DNA of 35,214 bases from Octopus bimaculoides (taxonomy: Eukaryota), in the NCBI RefSeq assembly GCF_001194135.2, contig NC_068984.1:9870102-9905315 (forward strand). The letters run 5' to 3'. Positions 6,896-32,058 of this stretch are shown here, piece by piece. The notes under the pieces are model-generated. The model ran no database searches, was not told the origin of the DNA, and worked only from the letters and a program-made list of their open reading frames with translations. Every line of letters starts with the position of its first letter. Positions within the stretch are counted from its first letter, which is position 1. The translations under genes and the position numbers were made by a program.

Positions 6896-6961
6896 TTATG
6901 CTGAGGGATGTCCTGCTGAATTGTCGTTGTCCTTCAATAATGGAGCCTTTTCATTGTTGAT
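6896..6961 (-). CDS. SLC18A: Terminal coding exon 16 (66 nt): INNEKAPLLKDNDNSAGHPSA*
   Basis: ttttcttttaaccag acceptor, phase 0, ExxxLL motif, TAA at 6898-6896. Confidence 0.8.
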   Translation of the reverse strand: MNNEKAPLLKDNDNSAGHPSA

Positions 6962-30900: not shown

Positions 30901-32058
30901 CAACAATAAATACAATTTACAGAGAAGACAAATACACGGGAAATAATTCGTTCATTTCCTGTATGAAATAAAATTGAAGCTCGATATGGAAATTGAGAAA
31001 ATTGTTTATATTAAATAGAGTCTTTAGAAGAAAATGGCGCAAGGGCATGATGTAGAGGTCAAACAACAAGAGGAGGAAATAAAATTAAGGTGATAAATGA
31101 CCAGAGCAATTATACAAATTTATTTATAGCCCATAAAATGTATGCCCAGACATAATTCGCTGATGAAATGTAATGAAATAGAATAATTGCTATGAGTTTG
31201 GCGAATTTAATTCTTTATTCTTTAGTTTCAAAGCAGCAGATTATCGGCACAATTGTTGATGTCGCAGAAATATTATTCTTCATTTAAATAATTACATGGA
31301 AAACAGGTGGATGGAAGGATGAAACTACAGTCTGACACATTATATGATGTAGAAGCCCAGGGTACACTGTGTGTGAGAAATACTCTCTCTTTACTCTTTT
31401 ACTTGTTTCAGTCATTTGACTGTGGCCATACTGGAGCACCAACTTTAGTCGAGAAAATCGACTCCAGGACTTATTCTTTGGAAGCCTAGTACTTATTCTA
31501 TCAGTTTCTTTTGCCGAACCGCTACGTTACGGGGACGTAAACACACCACCATCGGTTATAAAGTGATGTTGGGGGGACAAACACAGACACGCAAACATAT
31601 ACACACACATACATATATATACATATATATGACGGGCTTCTTTCAGTTTCCGTCTACCAAAACCACTCACAAGGCTTTGGTCGACCCGAGGCTATAGTAG
31701 AAGACACTTGCCCAAGGAGCCACGCAGTGGGACTGAACCCGGAACCATGTGGTTGGTAAGCAAGCTACTTACCACACAGCCAAATACTGGACAAACATTG
31801 GATATAGGTTTTTCTCAATCAAAGCAAACCTGGGGCTTATCAACAATAGCAACAGCAGCAGCAACAACAACAACAACAACAACAACAACAAAGAAAGCAA
31901 CCAAGAATTTACTTACCAACCAACGTTAGCAGCAAACTGTCATTGAATAACGAAAGACACACGATGATAATTACAATCTTCGTTGAATTCCGGAACCTTG
32001 ACCAACAAGTTTTGTCCTCAACGGGGCCCTCACGCATGACTACGACGCTTGAAAGCAT
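6896..32058 (-). CDS. SLC18A: Spliced gene, 16 coding exons, 459 aa: divergent SLC18/VMAT-like vesicular transporter (MFS). MLSSVVVMREGPVEDKTCWSRFRNSTKIVIIIVCLSLFNDSLLLTLVDPILPEMLYDLEH...YGYLIAAKGIAQFVCNPFVGYIVTRFGY...KRHSDVYGNVYAISDMA...INNEKAPLLKDNDNSAGHPSA*
   Basis: Manual translation and exon assembly. All 15 introns are GT-AG and phases are compatible, giving 1380 nt including TAA. SLC18 motifs seen: NPFVG..TRFGY, TRVLQG, TLLKDPY, WQLG, VDKRH..VYGNVYAISD. The symbol is family-level only; orthology is not established. Confidence 0.93.
7061..7620 (-). mobile_element. Tc1/mariner (rosa/DD41D-like) 3' remnant interrupted by a SINE
   Basis: ta-CAGGGTGGCCACAAAGTC terminus at 7061; translation APDLTPMDFFLGYIKSLVY...QHFEHL. 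Confidence 0.75.
7113..7325 (-). mobile_element. SINE family B copy with small gap
   Basis: Matches 31383-31782 at both ends. Confidence 0.85.
7622..8055 (+). mobile_element. Unclassified retroposon-like repeat ending in (aat)n(aac)n tail
   Basis: GC-richer block with a simple-repeat tail; no second copy in the window. Confidence 0.4.
8092..8173 (-). CDS. SLC18A: Coding exon 15 (82 nt): SLVYGAAILDMVCTPVTIFLRDIPGKKK, TM12
   Basis: tttgtttgtag acceptor and gtgagt donor; matches VMAT IIDILFAPLCFFLRSPP. Confidence 0.9.
8747..8792 (-). CDS. SLC18A: Coding exon 14 (46 nt): GPLVGGPLVYAYGFQ
   Basis: ctttttcag acceptor and gtaaat donor; matches VMAT GPSAGGAIAKAIGF. Confidence 0.88.
8960..9212 (-). 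mobile_element. Degenerate SINE with family-B-like head
   Basis: acacttgccc...gggctgaaccc...aaacagcc resembles the family B 5' end. Confidence 0.55.
10321..10440 (-). CDS. SLC18A: Coding exon 13 (120 nt): GLISTSMQPIFALVVDKRHSDVYGNVYAISDMAVCLSMSL
   Basis: ttcttcatag acceptor and gtaagt donor; strongest SLC18 signature (VDxRH..VYGxVYAIxD). Confidence 0.95.
10775..10984 (-). mobile_element. tRNA-derived SINE family C
   Basis: Minus-strand head tggcccagtggttagggc (box A) and gtttcgattccc (box B); tail similar to family B. Confidence 0.8.
11389..11615. mobile_element. Tc1/mariner-type MITE (227 bp) with TA TSD
   Basis: TIRs tAGGGTTGGCCA..GACAGTAAATCAAAA and TTTTGATTTACTGTC..TGGCCAACCCTG, flanked by TA. 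Confidence 0.85.
12194..12257 (-). CDS. SLC18A: Coding exon 12 (64 nt): LAYSITFTMMLVVTSFLGLAV
   Basis: ttcttccag acceptor and gtaagt donor; phase 0 to 1; 64 nt. Confidence 0.88.
13060..13111 (-). CDS. SLC18A: Coding exon 11 (52 nt): RWIQGLVGLFFSSLCLMA
   Basis: tttttag acceptor and gtaagt donor; RW start and 52-nt length as in VMAT. Confidence 0.9.
13295..13645 (+). mobile_element. RTE-tail-like repeat with three internal units of about 65 bp
   Basis: ctggctc..gtgccgg..aaaagcacc repeated three times, then ggaagggcatccagctgta and ccatgccagcatgg..ggacgttaaatgatg. Confidence 0.75.
13672..13869 (-). mobile_element. SINE family A copy
   Basis: Reverse complement of the 3554-3788 head and body. 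Confidence 0.85.
14127..14205 (-). CDS. SLC18A: Coding exon 10 (79 nt): GIVVLPTSVGYLAAGLIFPRLVRWFPR
   Basis: ttttctttag acceptor and gtatgt donor; matches VMAT LPASISYL. Confidence 0.92.
14268..14615 (-). mobile_element. mariner (DD34D) 3' remnant with TIR
   Basis: ta-CGAGGGTGAGTCAAAAAG terminus; translation HSPDLAPSDYHL / YSSDEEVKTVVKKWL...RWNIAIERNGDYVEK*. Confidence 0.85.
15538..15633 (-). CDS. SLC18A: Coding exon 9 (96 nt): LNIFLLNLDVSIVLAFLPIRLLELIDASTWQL, TM7
   Basis: ttttcag acceptor and gtaagt donor; same length as VMAT TM7 exon; LPI and WQLG conserved. Confidence 0.9.
16480..17741 (-). mobile_element. SINE family B copy spanning a large assembly gap (may be two copies)
   Basis: Tail at 16480-16543; body and head at 17487-17741. 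Confidence 0.8.
18379..18436 (-). CDS. SLC18A: Coding exon 8 (58 nt): HLHGSLCTLLKDPYIIIVA
   Basis: tttctacag acceptor and gtaagt donor; TLLKDPY motif. Confidence 0.93.
19775..20030 (-). mobile_element. tRNA-derived SINE (head related to 20574-20825)
   Basis: Minus strand gcgcatgactcagtggttagagc...tgtgttcttgagcaagacat...ttcacgttgct. Confidence 0.75.
20085..20540 (-). mobile_element. Tc1/mariner (rosa-like) deleted transposase remnant
   Basis: ORF 20245-20556 gives FQQDVATVHT...LWPPRSPDLTP; ta-CAGG terminus at about 20540. Confidence 0.85.
20574..20825 (+). mobile_element. tRNA-derived SINE with central domain gcgatggactggcgtcccgtccag...gaaaccgg (MetaSINE/V-SINE-like)
   Basis: Box A tggcttagtgg, box B gtttcgattcc; the central motif resembles conserved SINE domains as I recall them. 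Confidence 0.7.
20855..20895 (-). CDS. SLC18A: Coding exon 7 (41 nt): FLQLLTMKRESSVK
   Basis: Poly-T cag acceptor next to an assembly gap and AAG|gtaagc donor; phase 1 to 0 fits both neighbours; weak sequence similarity. Confidence 0.8.
21378..21669 (+). mobile_element. SINE family A: truncated head (21378-21436) followed by a full copy (21437-21669)
   Basis: gcgagctggcagaa occurs twice; the second copy closely matches 3554-3788. Confidence 0.88.
22256..22345 (-). CDS. SLC18A: Coding exon 6 (90 nt): AGPVYGSLLFEFVNPAFPFILLSGIMSFAI
   Basis: ctatttacag acceptor and gtaagt donor; matches VMAT GPPFGSVLYEFV. Confidence 0.93.
22402..22652. mobile_element. hAT-type MITE with 8-bp TSD
   Basis: TIR tAGTGGTTCTCAgC and GTTGAGAACCACTG; flanks atctaact and atctaatt. 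Confidence 0.88.
22719..22811 (-). CDS. SLC18A: Coding exon 5 (93 nt): ALGLVAATFKDDYRRGNVIGYAFSGLSIGII
   Basis: ttttgtttcag acceptor and gtaaat donor; matches VMAT DDEERGNVMG. Confidence 0.93.
23165..23688 (-). mobile_element. mariner (DD34D) transposase remnant
   Basis: ORF 23216-23521 gives ILHDDNVPCH...HPSCSQDLALADFHLFLKMK; downstream CIAAQGDYFE. Confidence 0.85.
23689..24071. repeat. Two long (CA)n microsatellites (23689-23773 and 23981-24071)
   Basis: Directly visible. Confidence 0.95.
24233..24316 (-). CDS. SLC18A: Coding exon 4 (84 nt): AFPYSKTYSMLIVTRVLQGISSSLTAVT
   Basis: cttctctcgtcag acceptor and gtgagt donor; RxLQG motif of TM4. Confidence 0.93.
25328..25386 (-). CDS. SLC18A: Coding exon 3 (59 nt): RFGYRKPMLFGSLVLLLSTL
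   Basis: ttgttttcag acceptor and gtatgt donor; length and sequence match VMAT RIGYPIP exon. Confidence 0.92.
25436..25871 (-). mobile_element. Two adjacent SINE family A copies with different tails (25436-25631 and 25632-25871)
   Basis: Two gaaaggatgaaaggcaaag...gctaagcatt...cgtgctaacgtttct blocks. Confidence 0.88.
26223..26345. repeat. (GA)n microsatellite
   Basis: Directly visible. Confidence 0.95.
26439..26660 (+). mobile_element. SINE family B, 3' half
   Basis: cgcttgacaaccg...ggttcggcaaaagag...gtcgatttg...cagcatggcc. Confidence 0.75.
26839..27046 (-). CDS. SLC18A: Coding exon 2 (208 nt): DPILPEMLYDLEH...GRYGYLIAAKGIAQFVCNPFVGYIVTR, luminal loop and TM2
   Basis: ttttcag acceptor, AG|gtaaat donor, phase 1 to 2; resembles VMAT GLLFASKATVQLITNPFIG. 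Confidence 0.93.
27105..27436 (+). mobile_element. 5' part of the same deleted DD37D-like element as 2122-2975
   Basis: ta-CAGGGTG terminus; matches the reverse complement of 2640-2975, including the deletion junction. Confidence 0.85.
28819..28945. repeat. (CA)n microsatellite
   Basis: Directly visible from about 28839. Confidence 0.9.
29405..29785 (-). mobile_element. Short non-autonomous RTE-like retroelement
   Basis: Minus-strand end gcctatgttccagagagcgaagagattaat resembles RTE 3' ends; the 5' part resembles RTE 5'UTRs (from recall). Confidence 0.5.
30330..30513. mobile_element. hAT-type MITE with 8-bp TSD
   Basis: Termini CAGCGATTCGCCACC and GGTTGATAACCGCTA; flanks ttatagaa and ttctagaa. 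Confidence 0.75.
31383..31782 (-). mobile_element. SINE family B, full length
   Basis: Minus-strand head tggctgtgtggtaagtagc...gggttcagtccc, internal (TA/CA) tract, gtaaaagagtaaag tail. Confidence 0.9.
31917..32058 (-). CDS. SLC18A: Coding exon 1 (from ATG; 142 nt): MLSS...RNSTKIVIIIVCLSLFNDSLLLTLV, TM1
   Basis: Matches VMAT TM1 ([22 protein letters not shown]). Donor G|gtaagt. Upstream acceptor ttttattgcag at 32127. Start codon uncertain (ATG at 32058 or 32037). Confidence 0.88.

What the first reader, a model, noticed from the sequence alone, without database searches (positions are those of the whole stretch)
6896..32058. Intact VMAT-derived SLC18 transporter lacking the canonical amine-binding and proton-coupling acids: candidate vesicular transporter for a new substrate
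Seen in sequence: an uninterrupted 459-aa ORF over 16 exons with canonical splice sites. Established knowledge: VMATs and VAChT use acidic residues in TM7 (VMAT2 E312) and TM10 (D399) for amine binding and proton coupling. Comparison with human VMAT2 from memory, using exons of equal length with no gaps: E312 is L, D399 is S, W318 is R, D262 is A, F429 is V, Y433 is M. D33, K138, Q142, R189, N305, Y341, D426 and D460 are retained. Inference: the scaffold and the TM1/TM2/TM11 charge network are kept but the substrate site is rebuilt. This suggests a neofunctionalised paralog that loads something other than a classical monoamine or acetylcholine into vesicles or granules. None of this is evident from the ORF track.
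Basis: partly seen in the sequence, partly recalled or inferred. Interest (0 to 1): 0.88.

Follow-up and report, generated by a model that had tools for sequence, protein, structure and literature searches.

The report
Orphan VMAT-like transporter gene in octopus
An intact octopus gene that databases label as the vesicular monoamine transporter belongs instead to an old, unstudied mollusc and annelid branch of that family which has lost the acidic residues that bind and pump monoamines, so it probably handles a different, still unknown cargo.

Summary
On the minus strand there are 16 GT-AG exons (32058 to 6896) giving a 459-aa ORF. All seven N-gaps lie in introns, and the product is colinear with orthologs. 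It equals residues 30-488 of Octopus bimaculoides XP_014778491.1, so one short 5' coding exon lies outside the window.

HMMER against solved human VMAT2 confirms E312->L, D399->S, W318->R, F429->V and Y433->M. D33, K138, Q142, R189, N305, Y341 and D426 are kept.

The gene is not a coleoid novelty. It belongs to a conserved clade found in cephalopods, a chiton and annelids, with a sister clade in annelid, nemertean and brachiopod. Canonical VMATs coexist with it in Argonauta, chiton and Capitella. dN/dS is 0.07-0.14, and a cephalopod ortholog is present as spliced mRNA in 67 sequencing runs. The gene shares 13 of 14 intron positions with the cephalopod VMAT gene. The AlphaFold model matches VMAT2 (TM-score 0.94).

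The cytosolic gate, the TM1/2/4/11 polar network and a C-terminal acidic dileucine signal are retained. The TM6, TM7 and TM10 acids and the aromatic lumenal gate are replaced, and a new conserved acid appears in TM1.

Best reading: a functional orphan SLC18A transporter with a rebuilt substrate site. Its substrate, coupling and location are untested.

The parts
32059..32094 (-). 5' extension of the first in-window exon (DYIGEPAADGEH). It is coding in the RefSeq 488-aa model and preceded by a conserved acceptor (cctcag|GAT). The true first coding exon (MPANEVEYNNSSGEVIK) is not in the window.
31917..32058 (-). Its last base begins the D48 codon.
26839..27046 (-). Exon 2 (aa 48-117): rest of the D48 codon (VMAT2 V41), short lumenal loop 1 with NDS/NDT sequons, and TM2 with I97 (F135), K100 (K138) and Q104 (Q142).
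25328..25386 (-). Exon 3 (aa 117-137), TM3
24233..24316 (-). Exon 4 (aa 137-165): TM4 with R151 (R189), Q154, S158 and S159 of polar network 1
22719..22811 (-). Exon 5 (aa 165-196): TM4-5 loop and TM5, with cytosolic-gate R179 (R217)
22256..22345 (-). Exon 6 (aa 196-226): TM5 end and TM6, with A224 at the D262 position
20855..20895 (-). Exon 7 (aa 226-239): cytoplasmic loop. It is clade-specific, because the single 102-nt VMAT exon is split into two exons here. An assembly gap starts 15 nt upstream of its acceptor.
18379..18436 (-). Exon 8 (aa 240-259): cytoplasmic loop and start of TM7
15538..15633 (-). Exon 9 (aa 259-291): TM7 with N265 (N305), D267 (G307), L272 (E312; codon 15595-15593), A273 (P313) and R278 (W318)
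14127..14205 (-). Exon 10 (aa 291-317): TM8 with V294 (F334), S298 (S338) and Y301 (Y341)
13060..13111 (-). Exon 11 (aa 317-334), TM9
12194..12257 (-). Exon 12 (aa 335-356): end of TM9 and start of TM10
10321..10440 (-). Exon 13 (aa 356-396): TM10 with S359 (D399; codon 10432-10430), and TM11 with Y378, Y382, D386 (D426), V389 (F429) and M393 (Y433)
8747..8792 (-). Exon 14 (aa 396-411), end of TM11
8092..8173 (-). Exon 15 (aa 411-438): TM12 with D420 (D460) and start of the C-terminal tail
6896..6961 (-). Exon 16 (aa 439-459 plus stop): cytoplasmic tail with the conserved acidic dileucine-type motif E442-K-A-P-L446-L447

Best explanation
This is the Octopus bimaculoides gene for XP_014778491.1, auto-annotated as 'synaptic vesicular amine transporter'. 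It is not the octopus VMAT. It belongs to an old, conserved and uncharacterised lophotrochozoan subfamily of SLC18A transporters, called clade X here. Clade X contains cephalopods, a chiton and annelids. Its sister, clade Y, is found in an annelid, a nemertean and a brachiopod.

Shown:
- The protein is a complete 12-helix MFS transporter of the VMAT fold and is under purifying selection.
- It keeps the parts that run the alternating-access cycle: cytosolic gate R217/Y418/Y422, and polar network D33-K138-Q142-R189-Q192-S196-S197-D426.
- It keeps a C-terminal [DE]xxxL[LIV] sorting signal of the kind that sends VMAT2 and VAChT to secretory or synaptic vesicles.
- It has lost, in every clade member, the TM7 Glu (E312->L) and TM10 Asp (D399->S/T). 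These residues bind the amine and take up protons in VMAT2.
- It has also lost the TM6 Asp (D262), the neighbouring P313, and all three residues of the aromatic lumenal gate (F135, F334, W318).
- It has gained a conserved Asp/Glu in TM1 at the V41 position.

Inferred:
- It still works as a proton-dependent transporter in an acidic vesicular or endolysosomal membrane. Coupling would run through the retained D33/D426/K138 network, possibly with a different stoichiometry.
- Its binding cavity is more aliphatic and its charge has moved, so it is tuned to a substrate other than the classical monoamines or acetylcholine. The substrate is unknown.
For: - Gene model and continuity.
- Identity with the RefSeq protein.
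- Family and fold: Pfam MFS_1 at 2e-43. HMMER gives VMAT2 E=1e-81..7e-83 against VAChT E=4e-51. The AF2 model has pLDDT 88 and pTM 0.87. Foldseek best hits are VMAT2 and VMAT1, target-normalised TM-score 0.94, rmsd 2.1-2.5 A.
- Residue mapping. Group-wise table. Of about 92 positions identical in VMAT and VAChT, 26 are replaced and fixed in the clade.
- Roles of E312, D399 and D426 and loss of transport on mutation: PMC11695631. Gates and polar network: PMC10959523.
- Clade: the same 10 protein clusters are the only strong hits among 5.8 billion clusters. In an exhaustive HMMER scan the clade collapses to two full-length representatives at 50% identity plus two Capitella fragments that may belong (residue pattern only).
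- Tree: NJ bootstrap X 97-100%, X+Y 100%, canonical VMAT 100% with X never inside it.
- Paralogy: canonical VMATs occur in the same species.
- Selection: dN/dS 0.137 against O. sinensis and 0.066 against Argonauta.
- Expression of an ortholog: an intron-less ORF on ~2.6-kb contigs from 67 sequencing runs.
- Gene structure: 13 of 14 VMAT introns are shared in position and phase.
- Sorting motif E-K-x-P-L-[LIV] is conserved.
Against: - No expression data for the octopus gene itself, and no localisation or transport data.
- The new TM1 acid (D48) and D267 in TM7 could take over amine binding, so monoamine transport by a different geometry is not excluded. That D48 faces the cavity is inferred only from helical periodicity with D33, L37 and I44.
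- W318R alone leaves human VMAT2 fully active for serotonin, so single substitutions need not be disabling.
- The phylogeny rests on distance methods only and the deep branching is unresolved.
- A canonical VMAT was shown for Argonauta, not for O. bimaculoides itself.
- The apparent absence from gastropods and bivalves rests on database sampling.
Confidence: 0.6

Rival explanations
1. It is still a vesicular monoamine (or other cationic amine) transporter. The amine-binding and proton-binding charge has simply moved, to the new TM1 Asp (D48, VMAT2 V41) and/or D267 (G307), so function is conserved with altered pharmacology.
For: An Asp/Glu at the V41 position is fixed in clade X and in clade Y. 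D33, K138, R189, N305, S338, Y341, Y422 and D426 are retained. W318R in human VMAT2 keeps full serotonin transport. RefSeq names the protein a vesicular amine transporter.
Against: E312 and D399 are invariant in all VMAT, VAChT and Portabella-like groups sampled, and mutating either abolishes or strongly reduces VMAT2 transport. The aromatic residues that stack on monoamines and close the lumenal gate (F135, F334, F429, Y433, W318) are all aliphatic or charged here. D267 is Asn or His in three annelids. A highly conserved canonical VMAT already exists in the same genomes.
Confidence: 0.2
2. It is a functional membrane protein but not a vesicle loader. It could be an endolysosomal or plasma-membrane exporter or detoxifier, a uniporter with no proton coupling, or a non-transporting sensor or regulator built on the SLC18 scaffold.
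For: Three of the five conserved membrane acids are lost. Four conserved helix-kink prolines (P237, P313, P376, P387) are replaced. There are no data on tissue or organelle. Acidic dileucine motifs also target lysosomes and endosomes (general knowledge).
Against: The cytosolic gate, polar network 1 and the D33/K138/D426 triad stay invariant over more than 500 million years. That is hard to explain unless the alternating-access cycle is still used. The model adopts a normal VMAT2-like cytosol-facing state.
Confidence: 0.17
3. It is a decaying duplicate, or an artefact of assembly gaps and gene prediction.
For: The window contains seven assembly gaps. One lies 15 nt from an exon. Gene models differ between Octopus species at 459, 488 and 430 aa.
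Against: All gaps are intronic and the frame is continuous. Exon lengths are identical in the gap-free O. sinensis locus. dN/dS is 0.07-0.14. Orthologs are conserved across two phyla. A spliced mRNA of an ortholog is found in 67 runs.
Confidence: 0.02

Closest known systems
VMAT1/VMAT2 (SLC18A1/A2) and invertebrate canonical VMATs
   Same: Best sequence match, about 35% identity and E about 1e-82. Same 12-TM fold, TM-score 0.94. 13 of 14 intron positions shared with the Argonauta VMAT gene. D33, K138, Q142, R189, N305, S338, Y341, Y418, Y422, D426 and R217 are retained. Both have a C-terminal acidic dileucine signal.
   Different: E312->L, D399->S/T, D262 lost, P313->A, N34->S, F135->I/V, F334->V, W318->R, F429->V, Y433->M and V41->D. 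Lumenal loop 1 is short and has no Cys, so there is no C117-C324 disulfide. It forms its own clade outside bilaterian VMATs, whereas canonical VMATs are 56-63% identical across phyla.
Portabella (prt, SLC18A4), the orphan insect SLC18A transporter
   Same: A third, orphan SLC18A paralog found beside VMAT and VAChT, with unknown substrate. An ecdysozoan third clade (shrimp, tardigrade, mosquito) that is probably Portabella also has Val at F429, an aliphatic residue at F135 and Leu at I44.
   Different: That ecdysozoan clade keeps E312, D399, P313, W318 and F334 but has D426->Q, the opposite pattern. There is no tree support for grouping it with clade X alone (0%), 24-35% with X+Y, and only 2 conservative shared derived residues. 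The identity of that clade as Portabella was not verified by name. Its orphan status is from memory and the Brooks 2011 paper was not held.
VAChT (SLC18A3)
   Same: Same family and fold; HMMER E=4e-51. Both have Ser at the A229 position.
   Different: VAChT keeps the TM7 Glu and TM10 Asp. The window protein shares 25 VMAT-specific residues against 6 VAChT-specific ones. VAChT genes are typically intron-less (general knowledge), unlike this 17-exon gene.
Clade Y: divergent SLC18A genes of Owenia (two adjacent accession numbers, one contig), Lineus and Lingula
   Same: Sister group at 100% NJ bootstrap in the reduced set. It also lacks E312 and D399, has P313->A, and carries an acid at V41.
   Different: Only 27% identical to clade X. 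It has additionally lost D426, Y341, S338 and N305, and has Q142->E. It is also uncharacterised.
SLC18B1 (VPAT, vesicular polyamine transporter)
   Same: An SLC18 member with a non-classical substrate range. It is a precedent for family members that carry other amines.
   Different: It is far more distant. No SLC18B1-type protein appeared among the named hits of any search here.
Other SLC18A paralogs that have independently lost the TM7/TM10 acids
   Same: Xenopus laevis XP_018108987 (Q at E312, G at D399, R at W318), Styela clava (A, S) and Branchiostoma (W, S). The VMAT2 structure paper also noted Arg/His at W318 in a Xenopus and a leech sequence.
   Different: These sit elsewhere in the tree, so they are separate events. 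None is characterised.

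Membership tests
SLC18A (VMAT/VAChT-type vesicular amine transporters, DHA12 MFS) | Full-length significant sequence similarity to VMAT/VAChT; MFS_1 domain | tested here: met
   HMMER against PDB gives VMAT2 at 7e-83 and VAChT at 4e-51. 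Pfam MFS_1 scores 2e-43.
SLC18A (VMAT/VAChT-type vesicular amine transporters, DHA12 MFS) | 12-TM fold superimposable on solved VMAT2/VAChT | tested here: met
   AF2 model has pLDDT 88.2 and pTM 0.87. Foldseek best hit is 8jtc VMAT2, target-normalised TM-score 0.94, rmsd 2.4 A.
SLC18A (VMAT/VAChT-type vesicular amine transporters, DHA12 MFS) | TM1 Asp (D33) and the K138-D426 pair with polar network 1 | tested here: met
   D40, K100, Q104, R151, Q154, S158, S159 and D386 are present and invariant or nearly so in the clade. N34->S and S200->A.
SLC18A (VMAT/VAChT-type vesicular amine transporters, DHA12 MFS) | TM7 Glu (VMAT2 E312 / VAChT E309), for substrate and proton binding | tested here: not met
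   Leu in all 11 clade members. Glu in all 43 VMAT, Portabella-like and VAChT sequences tabulated.
SLC18A (VMAT/VAChT-type vesicular amine transporters, DHA12 MFS) | TM10 Asp (VMAT2 D399 / VAChT D398), for the amine salt bridge and protonation | tested here: not met
   Ser in 10 clade members and Thr in 1. Asp in all 43 comparison sequences.
SLC18A (VMAT/VAChT-type vesicular amine transporters, DHA12 MFS) | Aromatic lumenal gate F135/F334/W318 | tested here: not met
   I/V, V/I and R (also E, N, Q) respectively. The gate is defined in PMC10959523.
SLC18A (VMAT/VAChT-type vesicular amine transporters, DHA12 MFS) | Cytosolic gate R217/M221/Y418/Y422 | tested here: met
   R179, Y378 and Y382 are invariant. 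M221 is Ile here.
SLC18A (VMAT/VAChT-type vesicular amine transporters, DHA12 MFS) | C-terminal acidic dileucine vesicle-sorting signal | tested here: met
   E442-K-A-P-L-L. The E-K-x-P-L-[LIV] form is in 7 of 10 clade members, with variants in Owenia and Capitella. Its sorting function is inferred from VMAT2 and VAChT (general knowledge).
SLC18A (VMAT/VAChT-type vesicular amine transporters, DHA12 MFS) | Proton-gradient-driven vesicular uptake of monoamines or acetylcholine; reserpine, tetrabenazine or vesamicol sensitivity | not testable with these tools
   Needs expression and uptake or binding assays.
Canonical VMAT orthogroup (SLC18A1/2 and invertebrate VMAT) | Groups within the bilaterian VMAT clade | tested here: not met
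   Canonical VMATs are monophyletic at 100% without clade X. X with spiralian VMAT gets 0% and VMAT+X+Y gets 2-7%. There is no excess of spiralian-specific VMAT residues: 3 against 3, where the control gave 14 against 1.
Canonical VMAT orthogroup (SLC18A1/2 and invertebrate VMAT) | VMAT-type exon-intron structure | tested here: met
   13 of 14 Argonauta VMAT introns are shared at the same column and phase. Ten internal exon lengths are identical.
Portabella (SLC18A4) | Orthology with the ecdysozoan third SLC18A clade | tested here: inconclusive
   X+Y with the Portabella-like clade gets 24-35% bootstrap, and X alone with it gets 0%. Only 2 shared derived residues were found, and the pattern of lost acids is opposite. 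No sequence named Portabella could be fetched.
Pseudogene / decaying duplicate | Frame disruptions, relaxed selection, no transcript | tested here: not met
   The ORF is intact with canonical splice sites. dN/dS is 0.07-0.14. An ortholog mRNA is found in 67 runs.

The most novel reading that the evidence does not exclude
Clade X, and perhaps its sister clade Y, is the vesicular loader of a transmitter or secreted small molecule that is not one of the classical monoamines or acetylcholine. On this reading it marks an unrecognised class of neurons or secretory cells in cephalopods, chitons and annelids. It would be a lophotrochozoan counterpart of the Drosophila Portabella problem. It would also be a natural example of an SLC18 transporter that runs its cycle without the TM7 Glu / TM10 Asp pair.
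Probability: 0.3. Interest if true: 0.85.

Novelty: new variant of a known kind. Interest (0 to 1): 0.62.

Why it matters
Vesicular transporters define transmitter identity. Single-cell atlases of cephalopods and annelids, and comparative studies of the monoamine system, treat 'VMAT' as one gene per invertebrate genome. A 2026 bivalve study states this explicitly, and a 2023 family phylogeny does not separate this clade.

This work shows a second VMAT-like gene that is strongly conserved, is labelled in RefSeq as the vesicular amine transporter, and lacks the residues that VMAT2 structures identify as the amine and proton sites. Two consequences follow.

First, marker-gene and orthogroup analyses in octopus, squid, chiton and annelids can mis-assign monoaminergic identity if this gene is pooled with VMAT.

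Second, the gene is a concrete handle on a possible unknown vesicular cargo in animals with large nervous systems.

For transporter mechanism, it is a natural experiment more than 500 million years old. The hinge and cytosolic gate are kept, while the acid pair and the aromatic lumenal gate are replaced.

Tried and rejected
Its numbering was later checked against the PDB-printed sequence and matched at residues 14-57 and 109-477.
O. sinensis P0001, 97% identical, was used instead. No run-level expression evidence for the octopus gene itself could therefore be obtained.
- The missing first coding exon was searched for in the 3.1 kb upstream within the window and in 10 kb upstream in O. sinensis. 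It was not found.
- Orthology with Portabella was tested by tree and by shared derived residues, without support. The Brooks 2011 paper was not held.
- Origin from a spiralian VMAT was tested by lineage-specific signatures, with no signal.
- The large 120-taxon NJ tree gave no resolution of deep nodes.
- A literature search for the accession numbers found nothing. The supplements of the Euprymna atlas do not identify its 'Vmat2-1' gene.
- Three intronic or flanking ORFs look from memory like mariner-type transposase remnants. They got no Pfam or PDB support, so that reading is left as a lead only.
- Cavity geometry could not be measured because model coordinates are not returned.

Full report
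**1. The sequence**

The window is AT-rich, rich in microsatellites, and has seven runs of N. SLC18-like peptides appear only in minus-strand ORFs. tblastn with the closest database protein, O. sinensis P0001, finds 16 colinear minus-strand matches covering residues 1-459. Junction refinement gives 16 exons with GT donors and AG acceptors throughout. The CDS is 1380 nt, or 459 codons plus stop. Coordinates are listed under 'parts'.

**2. Gaps**

Every N run lies in an intron. The critical one is 20911-21377. It ends 15 nt upstream of exon 7, inside the poly-pyrimidine tract, and the AG and the exon are intact. Three results show that nothing is lost:
- The 16 exon lengths are identical to those of the gap-free O. 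sinensis locus.
- The product aligns to P0001 at 97% identity with no indel.
- The product is identical to residues 30-488 of O. bimaculoides XP_014778491.1.

Several gaps abut (CA)n, (TA)n or poly-A tracts, which is the usual cause of such breaks.

**3. A correction to the ORF**

Argonauta and a second cephalopod ortholog start with MPANEVEY..., encoded on a 51-nt upstream exon plus a 36-nt longer second exon. The 12 codons behind it are open and conserved, and they are present in the RefSeq 488-aa protein. The 51-nt exon is not in the window. The full CDS therefore has 17 coding exons. Only the cytoplasmic N-terminus is affected.

**4. Residue claims**

HMMER against PDB sequences aligns the protein to natively numbered human VMAT2 (8ucj_A) over TM1 and TM2-TM12.
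- Kept: D33=D40, K138=K100, Q142=Q104, R189=R151, N305=N265, Y341=Y301, D426=D386, D460=D420.
- Changed: E312->L272, D399->S359, W318->R278, F429->V389, Y433->M393.
- D262->A224 holds in MAFFT alignments, but HMMER puts D262 in a 2-residue indel.

Published VMAT2 structures and mutagenesis show that the substrate amine salt-bridges D399 or E312. They propose D399, E312 and D426 as protonation sites, and mutating any of them strongly reduces transport (PMC11695631).

**5. It is a clade, not an octopus oddity**

The first protein search returned nine close relatives: O. sinensis, Argonauta hians, an unnamed cephalopod-like transcript (P0003), two genes of the chiton Liolophura, the annelids Owenia and Dimorphilus, and two unnamed sequences (P0007, P0008). 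After these there is a drop to vertebrate VMAT1 at 31-37% identity.

A profile search of the same 5.8-billion-cluster database adds only Capitella. An exhaustive HMMER scan of 1.84 billion representatives at 50% identity finds two full-length clade representatives (783 and 465 bits), and canonical VMATs start at 386 bits. Two Capitella fragments further down the list (288 and 207 bits) show clade-like residues at some key positions.

L272 is invariant in the clade; position 359 is Ser in all members except Capitella, which has Thr.

No gastropod or bivalve member appeared, although their canonical VMATs are abundant in the database.

**6. Paralogy**

A search with a Haliotis VMAT recovers canonical VMATs, which are 57-78% identical to it across phyla. 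These include Argonauta (P0259), Liolophura (P0249) and Capitella (P0248), that is, the same species that carry clade X. All canonical VMATs have N34, V41, F135, E312, P313, W318, F334, D399, D426 and F429. A canonical VMAT in O. bimaculoides itself was not retrieved. The Euprymna atlas uses a gene called 'Vmat2-2' as its dopaminergic marker, which implies at least two Vmat2-named genes in that squid.

**7. Phylogeny**

NJ with bootstrap on 120 sequences gives clade X 94% and clade X plus Capitella 91%. A sister group at 68% is made only of spiralian sequences: two Owenia genes, Lineus, Lingula and one unnamed.

In a 59-taxon set with two distance measures the support is:
- clade X 97-100% and clade Y 97-100%;
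- X+Y 100%;
- canonical VMAT, the Portabella-like ecdysozoan clade and VAChT each 100%;
- X inside spiralian or protostome VMAT 0%.

The arrangement of the four lineages is unresolved. (VMAT + Portabella-like) gets 57-74%, and long-branch attraction of X+Y to VAChT is likely.

A signature test finds no excess of spiralian-specific over vertebrate-specific VMAT residues in clade X (3 against 3; the ecdysozoan VMAT control gives 14 against 1). Clade X is on the VMAT side relative to VAChT (25 against 6). The VAChT group was verified against PDB. The ecdysozoan clade is called Portabella-like only by elimination.

**8. Gene structure**

In Argonauta, the clade X gene shares 13 of the 14 introns of the canonical VMAT gene at the same alignment column and phase. 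The 14th is 2 columns away. Exon lengths 59, 84, 93, 90, 96, 79, 52, 64, 120 and 46 are identical. Clade X has two extra introns: one at the 5' end, and one that splits the 102-nt loop exon into 41 and 58 nt. It supports a common VMAT-type ancestral gene, but it does not date the duplication.

**9. Is it alive?**

Nei-Gojobori dN/dS is 0.137 against O. sinensis (dS 0.105) and 0.066 against Argonauta (dS 1.34, near saturation). P0003 occurs as an uninterrupted 1458-nt ORF on ~2.6-kb contigs assembled from 67 blocks of sequencing runs. This is spliced mRNA. P0007 and P0008 sit on 2.2-3.4-kb contigs of the same kind. Synteny is kept: a G-patch/RRM gene lies tail-to-tail downstream in both O. sinensis and Argonauta.

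**10. What is kept and what is rebuilt**

The AF2 model is confident (pLDDT 88.2, pTM 0.87) with 12 long helices. It superposes on cytosol-facing VMAT2 (8jtc, 8xo9) at target-normalised TM-score 0.94 and rmsd 2.4-2.5 A.

Kept:
- cytosolic gate R217, Y418 and Y422;
- polar network 1 (D33, K138, Q142, R189, Q192, S196, S197, D426);
- N305, S338 and Y341;
- a C-terminal E-K-x-P-L-[LIV] motif, a [DE]xxxL[LIV] signal like those of VMAT2 and VAChT.

Replaced and fixed:
- 26 of about 92 positions that are identical in VMAT and VAChT;
- these include N34S, F135I/V, D262x, E312L, P313A, W318R, F334V and D399S;
- three further prolines are replaced (P237, P376, P387);
- F429V and Y433M are also fixed. 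All three lumenal-gate residues defined by the VMAT2-tetrabenazine structure (F135, F334, W318) are gone.

Gained:
- Asp/Glu at V41 in clade X and clade Y. Its codon spans intron 1.
- Asp/Asn/His at G307.

V41 lies on the same helical face as D33, L37 and I44, and the last two contact tetrabenazine. D48 therefore probably faces the cavity, but this is inference from periodicity. Lumenal loop 1 is short, carries N-glycosylation sequons and has no cysteine.

**11. Mechanism**

Shown: an intact VMAT-fold transporter under selection. The cycle machinery and sorting signal are conserved, and the canonical substrate and proton acids and the aromatic gate are replaced.

Inferred: it still alternates access and is probably proton-dependent through D40/K100/D386. 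It probably resides in an acidic vesicular or endosomal membrane. Its substrate probably differs from classical monoamines.

Caveat: human VMAT2 W318R is fully active for serotonin, and the relocated acid could bind an amine. I give the amine-transporter rival 0.2.

**12. Known or new?**

The gene is annotated, but only by homology. None of its accession numbers occurs in the searchable literature. A 2026 bivalve study states that protostomes have a single VMAT. Goulty et al. 2023 treat bilaterian VMATs as one clade. The VMAT2 structure paper noticed Arg/His at W318 in a leech and a frog sequence without further comment. The recognised SLC18 subfamilies are A1, A2, A3, A4 (Portabella) and B1.

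I classify this as a new variant of a known kind: an undescribed SLC18A subfamily with a remodelled active site. Its implied cephalopod specificity is wrong.

Noticed in passing
Twelve more codons and a conserved acceptor lie just upstream, and the first coding exon (17 aa) is outside the window. Public models disagree: O. bimaculoides 488 aa, O. sinensis 459 aa (starts at the internal Met), and O. vulgaris 430 aa, which skips the TM1 exon entirely.
   Followed up: yes
window 7121-7320, 16485-16543, 17486-17743, 31390-31780 (also 477-625 inverted): An interspersed SINE-like repeat family, 63-91% identical between copies. It lies in introns and in the 5' flank of the in-window exon 1, and two copies abut assembly gaps.
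   Followed up: partly
window 3547-3810, 21430-21693, 34313-34430; inverted copies at 25520-25743; related 13723-13859: A second interspersed repeat family, 81-94% identical, scattered in both orientations inside and outside the gene.
   Followed up: partly
window 2337-2702 (-), 20245-20556 (-), 23216-23521 (-): ORFs of 101-121 aa that look from memory like C-terminal fragments of mariner/Tc1-type transposases (motifs such as 'QQDSAPCHTS' and 'WPPRSPDLTP'). Pfam and PDB searches gave no significant hit, so this is unconfirmed.
   Followed up: partly
window gap flanks 9965-, 18508-18547, 20899-20910, 27960-27997, 28111-: Several assembly gaps are bordered by (TA)n, (CA)n or poly-A tracts. Long microsatellites also fill much of 3860-4530, 9470-10210, 23630-24110 and 26227-26750.
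   Followed up: partly
L001 56703-56852; L002 49891-54427: In both O. sinensis and Argonauta the next gene downstream, on the opposite strand, encodes a protein of about 412 aa with G-patch and RRM domains. Local synteny around the clade X gene is therefore conserved among octopods.
   Followed up: partly
proteins P0004/P0005 (Liolophura, same contig); P0095/P0153 (Owenia, accession numbers CAH1798159/60): The chiton has two clade X genes on one contig. Owenia has two clade Y genes with consecutive accession numbers on one contig, in addition to one clade X gene. This suggests local duplications within these orphan clades.
   Followed up: no
proteins P0091 (Xenopus laevis), P0113 (Styela clava), P0103 (Branchiostoma lanceolatum): Deuterostomes also carry divergent SLC18A paralogs that lack the TM7 Glu and/or TM10 Asp (Q/G, A/S and W/S respectively). 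They are unrelated to clade X in the tree, so loss of this acid pair has happened repeatedly in the family.
   Followed up: partly
proteins P0080, P0085, P0146 and relatives (ecdysozoan clade): A shrimp, tardigrade and mosquito clade, probably Portabella, keeps E312 and D399 but has Gln at D426 and Thr/Ser at N305. This is the reverse pattern of lost acids compared with clade X.
   Followed up: partly
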